Shown in pieces: positions 26,693 to 28,030 of a stretch of DNA of 64,000 nucleotides. The notes beneath the pieces were generated by a model, which was given only the letters and a program-made list of their open reading frames with translations, was not told where the DNA came from and did not search any database. The position numbers and the translations under genes are program-made. Source of the DNA: Neoechinorhynchus agilis. Its lineage: Eukaryota > Animalia > Acanthocephala. Numbering within the stretch: position 1 is the first letter of the stretch; every line of letters begins with the position of its first letter. The stretch covers positions 124,001 to 188,000 of the forward strand of contig CM121342.1 of assembly GCA_051530055.1 (NCBI GenBank), written 5' to 3'.

Positions 26693-28030
26693 GTGATTCG
26701 ATTTTGTGTTCTCCTTTAAACACCTCAGATGCTAAGCGAGACGTATCGGCGTAGTAAAGCGTGCGGTTTCTTTTCCTTCTCAGCTCGAGGTCCTGGCGCC
26801 TACAAAGGCCGCGGGTTCGAACACAAGGCGAAATACCAGATTCGTCTTCCCAAATTTTGAAGACGTGTATTGCAATTCCAGGGCAGTGAACAAGTTTAAC
26901 ATTATGATCAAAGAGCGAGTTATTGACAAAGTCGCATGAGTAGACCGCTGCGGCTGCATATAAGACTAGCCATGACGATATTAGCGTGCCTTGCGCAAGA
27001 GATTTCACGTGAACATCAAGTGGGACATTTGCATCGGGTAGCTTTTCCACAATTTGCGTATATCTCGACCAATTGCCTTTAATTTCGGCCACAACATCAT
27101 CTAATGTTCTTTTCCGCTGCGAGGGATTTCCGTGGACGTGAAAGGATACCGTTGAAAGTGCTAGGCGGGGACCCCTTCTTAGCTTTACGATTCTTAGTCC
27201 TAGTTATTTAGCTTTTGAAACTGAGGGCTTCTCTTTGTCCCTACCGCATCTCAAATATCGCACATACCTTGAATCTACTTCGTTAAGAAAATTTTGGTCA
27301 ATCTGGCAGGGCGCCATTCTCATAACTTTGCTTTCGTGCTCAATATAACTCCGGTATCGTGGATGTAAGTTATCACAACGCAAACCGTCAGTCAGCATCT
27401 CGTATGCGTCAGTCACTGGAAATGCAGACGAGATATTAGGTGTGAGATCCGGAGATTCCCTATGCCAAGCGGATGGCTCCGCATTGTTTAGCCGCATAGA
27501 CTTGGAACGAGCGGGTGTCGTTGCGATGTTGACGTTCCTGTAAACAGTTTCCCCAACTTCGGTCGCATTGCTGCTTGATTCTAAAGCATCCTGTGTGCTC
27601 TCCGAGTTGATATCAAACCTCGTTCAATACGGCCGAAGTACACGACACGTTGTCGCTTATTGCGAAGTGTGAAGTTGAGGCATCCGGAGCGATCACTGGG
27701 TTGCAATCCCTGGATTCACCTTCCACAGCATGGTGTGAATAGGCCGAGAATGTAGCAAGCAGCATTGAAACTCTGCAACGCATTGTTAGGACACGGTTGA
27801 CACGGTCCCTCGAGGGAAACCTTTTCAAGCAACGTTGGTGAGGCACGAACGGAGTCGCTTCCATCGCTAATACATTCAGTGTTGGTAGCTCTACCTGTAT
27901 CATCAACGGTATGATATGAGCTTTGATCCTTGTTGGTATTCATTGTGGCGAATTGATTGTTCTCGTCCATAGCAAAGAACGGAATGTTTGAGGTATCATT
28001 TTGGGGCGCAGTGACACACCGCAGCTCCGT
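26693..28030 (-). mobile_element. R2-like N-terminal region (linker, HPRY helix, OTU-like domain, pre-RT motif)
   Basis: AYEMLTDGLRCDNLHPRYRSY; LGLRIVKLRRGPRLALSTVSF..VPLDVHVKSLAQGT..YAAAAVYSCDF; RKRNRTLYYADTSRLASEVFKG. Confidence 0.85.

What the first reader, a model, noticed from the sequence alone, without database searches (positions are those of the whole stretch)
26820..27200. R2 retrotransposons carry an OTU-deubiquitinase-like domain with the catalytic residues replaced
Seen: just upstream of the pre-RT motif (RNRALYF.NT.RLA.E.F), seven diverged copies share a ~120 aa domain or its C-terminal part. Copies: 26820-27200(-), 30870-31255(-), 49705-49990(+), 35700-36065(+), and partial 3940-4150(+), 46130-46310(-), 51170-51335(+). 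Example: GLRIVKLRRGPRLALSTVSFHVHGNPS..VPLDVHVKSLAQGTLISSWLVLYAAAAVYSCDF..IWEDESGISPCVR. Known: OTU domains read GL.I..V.GDGNCLFRA...G....H..VR......Y........PF..HV..L...GT.....EI.A.......I.IH.......HY..V, and the spacing and hydrophobic pattern match by eye. The DGNC position reads GPRL, GSNL or GPRQ, and the HY position reads ISPC, TYPC, IFPC or LFPC. The loss is therefore consistent across lineages, not random decay. R2 proteins are known for ZF plus Myb N-termini, and Ulp1 protease domains are known in NeSL; I know of no pseudo-OTU in R2. Inference: a captured host deubiquitinase fold was repurposed, for example for ubiquitin/chromatin binding or nucleic-acid binding.
Basis: partly seen in the sequence, partly recalled or inferred. 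Interest (0 to 1): 0.87.

Follow-up and report, generated by a model that had tools for sequence, protein, structure and literature searches.

The report
Catalytically dead OTU domain in R2
R2 retrotransposons of thorny-headed worms (Acanthocephala) carry, between their zinc fingers and the reverse transcriptase, a conserved deubiquitinase-type (OTU) fold that has lost its catalytic cysteine and histidine; it sits where R2's usual Myb DNA-binding domain should be, an R2 architecture I found in no paper of the searchable library.

Summary
The window is a dead rDNA region of Neoechinorhynchus agilis (Acanthocephala), full of broken copies of at least five diverged R2 lineages. Element B (28452-31788, -) ends exactly at the canonical 28S R2 site. 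Upstream of the RNRALYF (RT -1) motif, all seven copies carry all or part of a ~130-aa domain preceded by a ~70-aa three-helix unit (LHPRY motif).

Three tests give the same register against OTU deubiquitinases:
- A family profile's best PDB sequence hit is OTUD5 (E 0.02).
- hhalign against human OTUD5/1/3 gives E 5.6e-6, score 42 versus at most 22 in 200 shuffles.
- An AlphaFold2 model (core pLDDT >90) gives only OTU domains as its top 50 Foldseek PDB hits (OTUD3 TM 0.80, rmsd 2.9 Å).

The Cys position is L/M/Q in every member, and the His strand reads G-(I/L)-x-P-C with no His. The domain is as constrained as the RT (pN/pS 0.22 vs 0.32). An intact 1177-aa relative sits in the same 28S site. 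No Myb or ZnF1 is detectable. All named relatives are acanthocephalan, and the latest R2 surveys mention no such domain. Function is untested. My best guess is a non-catalytic binding module standing in for ZnF1-Myb; a ubiquitin-binding pseudo-DUB is the main rival.

The parts
26817..27203 (-). Copy A: complete OTU-like core (LGLRIV ... GISPCVR). Cys position = L in GPRL. A stop codon lies immediately upstream.
   Evidence: Present in the protein collection as P0001.
27204..27428 (-). Copy A: conserved three-helix N-extension (AYE ... LHPRYRSY ... RYVRYL).
30880..31242 (-). Copy B: OTU-like core (MGLKII ... GIFPCTR), GSNL at the Cys loop. One in-frame stop replaces the conserved Trp.
31243..31470 (-). 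Copy B: three-helix N-extension with the LHPRY motif.
28261..31788 (-). Element B, the most complete R2 copy in the window. It runs linker, helices, pseudo-OTU, RNRALYF (30814-30837), RT, CCHC, RLE (ORF end 28452), then a 3' UTR of about 190 nt. It is 5'-truncated (no zinc fingers) and has frame breaks near 30367-30406 and at 30113.
28218..28262 (-). 28S rRNA sequence starting at the canonical R2 insertion site (TAGCCAAATGCCTCGTCATCTAATTAGTGACG...). This is the 3' junction of element B.
49480..49950 (+). Copy C: helices (LHPRQ at 49540) plus the OTU-like core from 49705 (MGLRII, GPRQ). It has an internal deletion and is truncated before the PC strand.
35699..36055 (+). Copy D: OTU-like core (DGPQQ ... 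DTYPCVR) with two in-frame stops. A frameshift precedes RNRTLYF (36096-36119).
3906..4151 (+). Copy E: C-terminal half of the core (WAASNVYKCDF ... DLLPRVL). RNCALYF lies at 4194-4217 and the RT continues to about 6516.
   Evidence: 64% aa identity to P0003.
46119..46332 (-). Copy F: C-terminal half of the core (FAASAVYHCDF ... GLFPCVR), frameshift near 46187. It is followed by a 563-aa RT ORF (44308-45999).
51170..51327 (+). Copy G: C-terminal third of the core (FAAAEAHSCDF ... GTYPCVK), same lineage as D. RSRTLYF lies at 51368-51391 after a frameshift.

Best explanation
SHOWN. The domain is a catalytically dead OTU-fold (papain-like deubiquitinase fold) module. It is an integral, selected part of the single ORF of acanthocephalan R2 elements. 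Their architecture is one or two ZnF3:2-like finger pairs (CCHH + CCHC), a disordered linker, a three-helix unit (LHPRY), the pseudo-OTU, then RT(-1) RNRALYF, RT, CCHC and RLE. These elements insert at the canonical R2 site of 28S rDNA. The nucleophile Cys is replaced by L/M/Q, and the His strand reads G-(I/L)-x-P-C.

INFERRED. Thiol-protease chemistry seems ruled out, yet the fold is conserved about as tightly as the RT. It therefore most likely works by binding rather than catalysis. It sits directly N-terminal to RT(-1), exactly where ZnF1-Myb sits in every other described R2. No ZnF1 or Myb can be found, although the element still hits the exact R2 site. My preferred mechanism is that the helices plus pseudo-OTU unit has taken over the ZnF1-Myb job. 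That job is holding the 28S target DNA, and/or the element's RNA, next to the RT during target-primed reverse transcription.
For: Fold and homology:
- The A4 profile's top PDB sequence hit is OTUD5, in the register gskliLrtia / DGACLFRAVA.
- hhalign against OTUD5/1/3 gives E 5.6e-6 over 95 columns in the same register. Shuffled controls have mean 11.8 and max 22.2 against the observed 42.1.
- The AF2 model has mean pLDDT 83.5, with the core above 90.
- The top 50 Foldseek PDB hits are all OTU domains: OTUD5 E 1.6e-6; OTUD3 TM 0.80, rmsd 2.9 Å over 142 columns. The viral structure library also returns many OTU-annotated proteins.
- In the model, the helix after the first strand starts at the residue aligned to the catalytic Cys, as in papain-like enzymes.

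Dead active site: the Cys column holds L 10, M 3, Q 3. P is present in 17/17 and C in 17/18 on the His strand, and no member has a His there.

Selection:
- Copy E vs P0003: core pN/pS 0.22, RT 0.32.
- Five more pairs: 0.55-0.61 for the core against 0.39-0.54 for the RT where it could be measured, with pS saturated.
- Copy F vs P0002: pN 0.17-0.33 against pS 0.87-0.91.
- Intact 1177-aa and 1492-aa ORFs exist.

R2 identity:
- 3' junctions lie at TAGCCAAATGCC... for element B and for intact P0008 in two assemblies.
- P0008 aligns to solved R2 proteins at E 2.6e-68 from RT(-1) onward. A weak match (domain E 1.3) pairs its first ZnF pair with theirs.

Myb absent:
- No alignment to R2 N-termini beyond the ZnF pair.
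- No Pfam Myb/SANT hit even at E<=10.
- The three-helix unit alone (pLDDT 79) has no Foldseek hit better than E 0.56 and none to a Myb.

Charge: the cores have pI about 9 (net +3 to +7) in 7 of 9 full cores. Human OTUD5/1/3 have pI 5.0-6.8.
Against: - No binding or activity data exist.
- The DNA/RNA-binding role rests only on position in the protein, absence of a detectable Myb, and a mostly basic charge. Copy B's core is acidic (pI 5.3) and a P. laevis core is neutral.
- Absence of Myb is a negative result with no positive control: I could not run canonical R2 N-termini through the same searches.
- OTU folds are known as ubiquitin/UBL binders, not DNA binders.
- The ZnF pairs alone might suffice for targeting.
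- The His position was placed from secondary structure and motif order. hhalign did not align the last strands, and I had no coordinates for a residue-level superposition.
- Single-sequence Pfam fails: OTU matches 1 of 25 members at E 0.14.
Confidence: 0.45

Rival explanations
1. Pseudo-deubiquitinase that still binds ubiquitin or a ubiquitin-like modifier. The dead OTU would dock R2 protein onto ubiquitinated or SUMOylated chromatin or repair factors at the rDNA nick. Alternatively it would shield the protein or its partners from ubiquitin-dependent turnover.
For: - The fold's only established ligands are ubiquitin and UBLs. The closest structures are OTUD5, OTUD2, yeast Otu1 and viral OTUs, many of them solved in complex with ubiquitin or ISG15.
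- Transposons repeatedly recruit ubiquitin/SUMO-pathway domains: OTU or Ulp1 in Ginger1, OTU in Helitrons (PMC2836005); OTU and Josephin on some ORF2p-like proteins (PMC13405545).
- The domain is under purifying selection.
Against: - Nothing tested here addresses ubiquitin binding.
- Overall identity to active OTUs is only 9-15%, so conservation of the S1 ubiquitin surface cannot be assumed.
- It does not explain how an R2 without ZnF1-Myb still finds the exact 28S site.
Confidence: 0.3
2. The domain is still an enzyme that uses non-canonical residues. For example, the invariant Cys of the P-C motif could serve as nucleophile, with a His elsewhere such as the conserved His of LHPRY.
For: The P-C motif is nearly invariant (P 17/17, C 17/18). 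The His of LHPRY is present in 11/12 members.
Against: - The Cys lies on the last beta-strand, not at the N-terminus of the central helix, where papain-like nucleophiles gain their reactivity.
- The canonical Cys and His positions are both lost in every lineage.
- No coordinates were available to check whether Cys205 and His26 are near each other.
Confidence: 0.05
3. The OTU resemblance is convergent or a modelling artefact: an unrelated alpha/beta domain that AlphaFold2 and Foldseek pull towards OTU.
For: - Sequence identity to OTUs is 9-15%.
- Pfam OTU is not detected above threshold.
- Profile against PDB sequences reaches only E 0.02.
- The model was built from only 25 related sequences.
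Against: - Three methods of different kinds give the same register, which chance would not produce.
- The hhalign score lies about 14 sd above shuffled controls.
- Remnants of the OTU Cys-box (L-I-F-R-T vs C-L-F-R-A) and of the 'E-L-x-A-x-A-x-x-Y' helix (L-V-L-x-A-A-x-x-Y) persist.
- All 50 top structural hits are OTUs, with no competing fold.
Confidence: 0.05
4. A functionless relic: an OTU domain captured once and now decaying neutrally inside the ORF as spacer.
For: The catalytic residues are gone, and all window copies are pseudogenes.
Against: - pN/pS is well below 1 and similar to the RT.
- Motifs are conserved between Neoechinorhynchus and Pomphorhynchus lineages at 20-25% overall identity.
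- The reading frame is kept in intact 1177-aa and 1492-aa ORFs.
- AF2 predicts a well-packed core.
Confidence: 0.05

Closest known systems
OTU-family deubiquitinases (Pfam PF02338; human OTUD5/DUBA, OTUD3, OTUD1, OTUD2, yeast Otu1/Otu2)
   Same: Same predicted fold and order of secondary-structure elements (TM 0.6-0.8). Same sequence register around the Cys-box helix and the following helices.
   Different: No catalytic Cys (L/M/Q), Asp (G/S/T) or His. Only 9-15% identity and below Pfam's threshold. Mostly basic rather than acidic. Embedded in a retrotransposon ORF with a family-specific three-helix extension.
OTU and Ulp1 protease domains in other transposons (Ginger1 transposases, animal Helitrons; Ulp1 in NeSL and Mutator). 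A Symbiodinium ORF2p-like protein with an N-terminal OTU.
   Same: A ubiquitin/SUMO-protease fold fused to a transposition protein (PMC2836005; PMC13405545).
   Different: Those domains match Pfam OTU/Ulp1 and are described as proteases with their motifs. Here the active site is dead. None of them is in R2 or in a 28S-specific element.
R2 lineage A (ZnF3:2 - ZnF1 - Myb - RT - CCHC - RLE; solved structures 9nl3, 9dou, 9nl2)
   Same: Same 28S insertion site. RT through RLE is homologous (E 2.6e-68). A weak match (domain E 1.3) pairs the N-terminal CCHH+CCHC fingers with the first finger pair of the solved R2 protein. RT(-1) lies at a similar distance from the N-terminus: residue 370 vs 344.
   Different: ZnF1 and the 'hallmark' Myb are not detectable. 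In their place are a disordered linker, the three-helix unit and the pseudo-OTU. Some members have two ZnF pairs.
Utopia (Myb-less relatives of R2 that target U2 snRNA genes or other sites)
   Same: RLE-type LINE with tandem N-terminal ZnFs and no Myb (PMC13188248).
   Different: The acanthocephalan elements sit in the canonical 28S R2 site, not in U2 genes, and carry the pseudo-OTU. No phylogeny against Utopia was run.
Pseudo-deubiquitinases and non-catalytic uses of OTU proteins (e.g. OTULINL/FAM105A; scaffold roles of OTUD4). From my own knowledge, not tested here.
   Same: An OTU fold retained without its catalytic residues and used for binding or scaffolding.
   Different: Those are host proteins. 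No retrotransposon example turned up in the literature searched here.

Membership tests
OTU deubiquitinase family | OTU (papain-like alpha/beta) fold | tested here: met
   The AF2 core has pLDDT >90. All 50 top Foldseek PDB hits are OTU domains, with E to 1.6e-6 and TM to 0.80. This is a predicted structure, not an experimental one.
OTU deubiquitinase family | Sequence-profile membership (Pfam PF02338 above gathering score) | tested here: not met
   No hit for the window copies. One of 25 members matches at E 0.14. Profile-profile similarity is nonetheless significant: hhalign E 5.6e-6, 0 of 200 shuffles.
OTU deubiquitinase family | Catalytic Cys at the N-terminus of the central helix (D-G-N-C-L-F-R-A box) | tested here: not met
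   The aligned column holds L 10, M 3, Q 3 and never C. The Asp position holds G/S/T/V, plus one C.
OTU deubiquitinase family | Catalytic His at the start of the last strand (H-Y motif) | tested here: not met
   The strand reads G-(I/L)-x-P-C-(V/I), with no His in any of 18 sequences. The register comes from secondary structure and motif order, not from a coordinate superposition.
OTU deubiquitinase family | Isopeptidase activity or ubiquitin/UBL binding | not testable with these tools
   Needs biochemistry or complex prediction.
R2 non-LTR retrotransposons | Insertion at the conserved 28S rDNA R2 site | tested here: met
   Element B's 3' end abuts TAGCCAAATGCCTCGTCATCTAATTAGTGACG. Intact P0008 has the same junction in L001 and L002. 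The 5' junctions were not recovered.
R2 non-LTR retrotransposons | R2-type RT with RT(-1)/0 extension, C-terminal CCHC knuckle and restriction-like endonuclease | tested here: met
   P0008 vs solved R2 proteins: E 2.6e-68 over residues 370-877, plus residues 914-1153 covering CCHC and RLE. Window ORF 28452-30113: E 1.8e-31.
R2 non-LTR retrotransposons | N-terminal zinc finger(s) | tested here: met
   CCHH+CCHC pairs are present in P0008, P0011, P0003 and P0026. P0008 residues 2-66 align weakly (domain E 1.3) to residues 6-66 of 9nl3. The window copies themselves are 5'-truncated; only C keeps remnants, at 48649-49025.
R2 non-LTR retrotransposons | Myb domain next to ZnF1 ('hallmark' per PMC13188248) | tested here: not met
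   No alignment to the R2 Myb region. No Pfam Myb/SANT hit at E<=10. The three-helix unit has no Myb-like structural match. This is a negative result without a positive control.

The most novel reading that the evidence does not exclude
An R2 lineage has replaced the ZnF1-Myb target-recognition module, thought to be universal and ancestral to R2, with an inactivated deubiquitinase fold. It nevertheless still integrates at the exact canonical 28S site. That would make an OTU fold a sequence-specific nucleic-acid-positioning module and a second, independent solution to R2 targeting.
Probability: 0.3. Interest if true: 0.85.

Novelty: new variant of a known kind. Interest (0 to 1): 0.68.

Why it matters
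R2 is the model for target-primed reverse transcription. It is also being engineered for gene insertion at the rDNA safe harbour. Current surveys treat ZnF plus Myb as the invariant targeting module, and use Myb to define R2.

A family that keeps the R2 site but swaps Myb for a dead OTU fold raises two points. Either target recognition can be rebuilt from a very different scaffold, or R2 can hard-wire a ubiquitin-pathway interaction. Both are directly testable with the intact acanthocephalan ORFs.

It also adds a clear retrotransposon case to the short list of pseudo-deubiquitinases. And it extends R2 to a phylum (Acanthocephala/Syndermata) absent from published inventories.

Tried and rejected
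- Single-sequence Pfam scans of the window copies: no OTU hit.
- Profile of the window copies alone against PDB sequences: only coiled-coil noise.
- The search for homologous proteins with the domain: nothing. With the A4 profile: only P0007. Its word filter misses this family. The exhaustive HMMER search gave the 24 relatives.
- Exact look-up of the window's 553-aa RT ORF: not on record.
- Rfam on the loci of the intact relatives: no rRNA call, because only about 50 nt of 28S flank is present. The junction was read directly instead.
- Searches for the upstream 28S half-site next to element B: none found, because B is 5'-truncated into a 21-bp tandem array.
- Myb hypothesis for the three-helix unit: modelled separately, with no Myb/SANT/homeodomain match.
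- Classical dN/dS: synonymous sites are saturated in all informative pairs, so only pN/pS is reported. The two 98%-identical L004 copies have too few changes (8) to be informative.
- Species of GCA_028748465.1/GCA_028748445.1 and of SRR34340284 could not be established.
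Full report
**What the window is.** The exhaustive protein search returned a protein identical to an ORF of copy A, on a 16.4-Mb NCBI contig. 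Its closest relatives are annotated proteins of Neoechinorhynchus agilis, an acanthocephalan; one of them, P0003, lies on a contig of the same size in GCA_051530055.1. The window holds a 28S rRNA gene fragment at 21206-23757(-). It also holds four copies of the 28S sequence that lies just 3' of the R2 insertion site. tblastn shows many RT/RLE fragments of R2-type elements, nested and truncated. The region is therefore a decayed rDNA-derived R2 graveyard.

**The observation.** They belong to at least five lineages, A, B/F, C, D/G and E, which share only 30-40% amino-acid identity in the domain. Every copy in the window is broken by stops, frameshifts or truncation. The conserved unit is larger than stated. 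It comprises a core of about 130 aa, running from (M/L)GL(R/K)I(I/V) to G-x-x-P-C-V-R. A conserved region of about 70 aa precedes the core, with F..AYE, LHPRY and Y..YL motifs, predicted as three helices.

**They are genuine R2 elements.** Element B (28452-31788, -) has a 3' UTR of about 190 nt. It abuts ...ATAACTC|TAGCCAAATGCCTCGTCATCTAATTAGTGACG, the canonical R2 site of 28S rDNA.

An intact 1177-aa relative, P0008, is found on two NCBI contigs. It ends at the same junction (TAGCGAAATGCCTCGTCATCTAATTAGTGAC).

P0008 aligns to solved R2 proteins at E 2.6e-68 from its RNRALYY motif (residue 370 = residue 344 of 9nl3, the RT -1 region) through RT, CCHC and RLE. Its first two zinc fingers match, weakly (domain E 1.3), the first finger pair of the same R2 protein. 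Full-length relatives carry one (P0008) or two (P0003, P0011, P0026) CCHH+CCHC finger pairs. After the fingers come a low-complexity linker, the three helices, the domain and the RT.

**Is it an OTU fold?**
- *What failed.* Single sequences do not reach Pfam OTU. Among 25 family members, one matches at E 0.14. A profile of the window copies alone found nothing in PDB sequences.
- *Profile against PDB sequences.* With a 25-sequence alignment (A4) built from the 24 relatives, the best PDB sequence hit is OTUD5. The E-value is 0.02, not significant alone.
- *Profile-profile comparison.* I recovered the OTU-domain sequences of human OTUD5, OTUD1 and OTUD3 from PDB alignments and aligned them (A5). 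hhalign of A4 against A5 gives Prob 85.6%, E 5.6e-6 over 95 columns in the same register. 200 column-shuffled templates scored mean 11.8, sd 2.1, max 22.2 against the observed 42.1. The reversed template scored 12.3.
- *Structure prediction.* AlphaFold2 on A4 (target: P0002 residues 195-440, N. agilis) gave mean pLDDT 83.5, above 90 for residues 80-205. The topology is strand, five helices, four-stranded sheet.
- *Structure search.* Foldseek against the PDB returned OTU domains as all 50 top hits. OTUD5 scored E 1.6e-6, rmsd 2.6 Å. OTUD3 scored E 2.4e-6, TM 0.80, rmsd 2.9 Å over 142 columns. OTUD1, OTUD2, yeast Otu1/Otu2, A20 and viral OTUs followed. The viral structure library also returned many OTU-annotated proteins.

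I regard homology to OTU as established at the level a computation can give.

**The active site is gone.** The column aligned to the catalytic Cys (OTUD5 DGAC) holds L (10), M (3) and Q (3). The Asp column holds mainly G and S. In the model, the central helix begins exactly at this residue. The last strand, where OTUs carry H-Y, reads G-(I/L)-x-P-C. P is present in 17/17 sequences and C in 17/18, and no sequence has a His there. Traces of the Cys box (L-I-F-R-T vs C-L-F-R-A) and of the E-L-x-A-x-A helix (L-V-L-x-A-A-x-x-Y) remain. The His register rests on secondary structure, because hhalign did not extend over the last strands and I had no coordinates.

**It is selected, not decaying.**
- Copy E vs its 64%-identical relative P0003: pN/pS is 0.22 in the OTU-like core and 0.32 in the RT.
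- Five more distant pairs: 0.55-0.61 in the core, against 0.39-0.54 in the RT for the four pairs where it could be measured, with pS saturated near 0.8.
- Copy F vs P0002: pN is 0.17-0.33 and pS is 0.87-0.91.
- The motifs persist between Neoechinorhynchus and Pomphorhynchus elements at 20-25% identity.
- Intact ORFs of 1177 and 1492 aa exist.

**Myb.** In every described R2, ZnF1-Myb lies between the distal fingers and the RT. The 2026 survey calls Myb the hallmark and classes Myb-less relatives as Utopia (PMC13188248). In these proteins I found no alignment to the Myb region of solved R2 proteins. There was no Pfam Myb/SANT hit even at E<=10. The three-helix unit, modelled alone (pLDDT 79), had no Myb-like structural match; its best Foldseek E-value was 0.56. 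This is a negative result without a positive control.

**Mechanism.**
- *Shown.* A dead OTU fold, selected, sits directly before RT(-1) in elements that still hit the R2 site.
- *Inferred.* It acts by binding. The domain occupies the ZnF1-Myb position, and Myb is undetectable. The core is basic in 7 of 9 full sequences (pI about 9), whereas three active human OTUs have pI 5.0-6.8. I therefore favour a role in holding 28S target DNA and/or R2 RNA, with confidence about 0.45.
- *Main rival (about 0.3).* A ubiquitin/UBL-binding pseudo-DUB, in line with the fold's known ligands and with the recurrent recruitment of OTU, Ulp1 and Josephin domains by transposons (PMC2836005; PMC13405545).
- *Minor rivals (each about 0.05).* Non-canonical catalysis through the P-C cysteine, convergence or modelling artefact, and neutral relic.

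**Novelty.** All named relatives are from N. agilis or Pomphorhynchus laevis; the sources of three further contigs are unidentified. The R2 survey and review of 2026 list 13 phyla, without Rotifera or Acanthocephala. They describe only ZnF and Myb variation and contain no mention of OTU or ubiquitin. Full-text searches for OTU together with non-LTR elements gave only the Ginger/Helitron paper and one Symbiodinium ORF2p-like case. I therefore rate this a new variant of a known kind: R2 with a new N-terminal architecture. The literature library is incomplete, and Repbase/Dfam could not be searched.

Noticed in passing
window 21206-23757 (-), and 21045-21203 (-): A 28S rRNA gene fragment (Rfam LSU model positions 24-2253) stops about 25 nt upstream of the R2 site. 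An RT fragment of a 5'-truncated R2 copy follows it immediately. This looks like an R2 insertion with a small upstream target deletion.
   Followed up: partly
window 7396-7417 (+), 40887-40908 (-), 12011-12032 (+): Three further copies of the 28S sequence just 3' of the R2 site. Two share the same three mismatches (GCAAAAGACCTCGTCATCTAAT). About 55-65 bp after each of these two lies a fragment of the LHPRY three-helix region (7470-7589; 40715-40834). This suggests a duplicated composite: R2 3' end, 28S stub, then the next element's N-terminal region.
   Followed up: no
window 32078-34469: A 21-bp tandem array (about 114 copies, consensus AAAATTTTGGTGACGTCATCA) lies directly 5' of element B and replaces its zinc-finger region. 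It produces long spurious ORFs on both strands and sub-threshold Rfam hits to plant miRNA families.
   Followed up: partly
whole window (copies A, B/F, C, D/G, E): At least five R2 lineages, only 30-40% identical in the domain, coexist in one 64-kb stretch of one genome. That is unusually high R2 lineage diversity for a single species.
   Followed up: partly
window 54192-56129 (-): A different LINE. Its 440-aa ORF ends in a Cys/His motif and an RPDG...WDAT endonuclease-like motif, with an RT only 23% identical to the R2 relative P0008. Pfam gives no hit for the ORF.
   Followed up: no
window 58294-59103 (+): A 269-aa ORF matches TB2/DP1/HVA22 (REEP-like; Pfam E 8e-7, residues 24-64). This may be an exon of a host gene next to the repeat region.
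   Followed up: no
proteins P0014 (1288 aa), P0018 (654 aa), P0024 (733 aa): Three proteins match the domain profile only through 6-12 tandem repeats of one short stretch (profile positions 40-91, 131-158 or 98-126). They may be tandemly amplified fragments of the domain, or low-complexity noise.
   Followed up: no
Foldseek viral library: Baculovirus VP80 capsid proteins rank among the best viral structural matches to the pseudo-OTU model (E 8e-7 to 3e-4), ahead of many annotated viral OTU proteins. VP80 may contain an unannotated OTU-like fold.
   Followed up: no
L004 2943-3635 (-) and 4583-5320 (+): Two 98%-identical copies of the P0002-type element lie head to head about 1 kb apart on an N. 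agilis contig. This suggests recent activity or a recent inverted duplication of this lineage.
   Followed up: no
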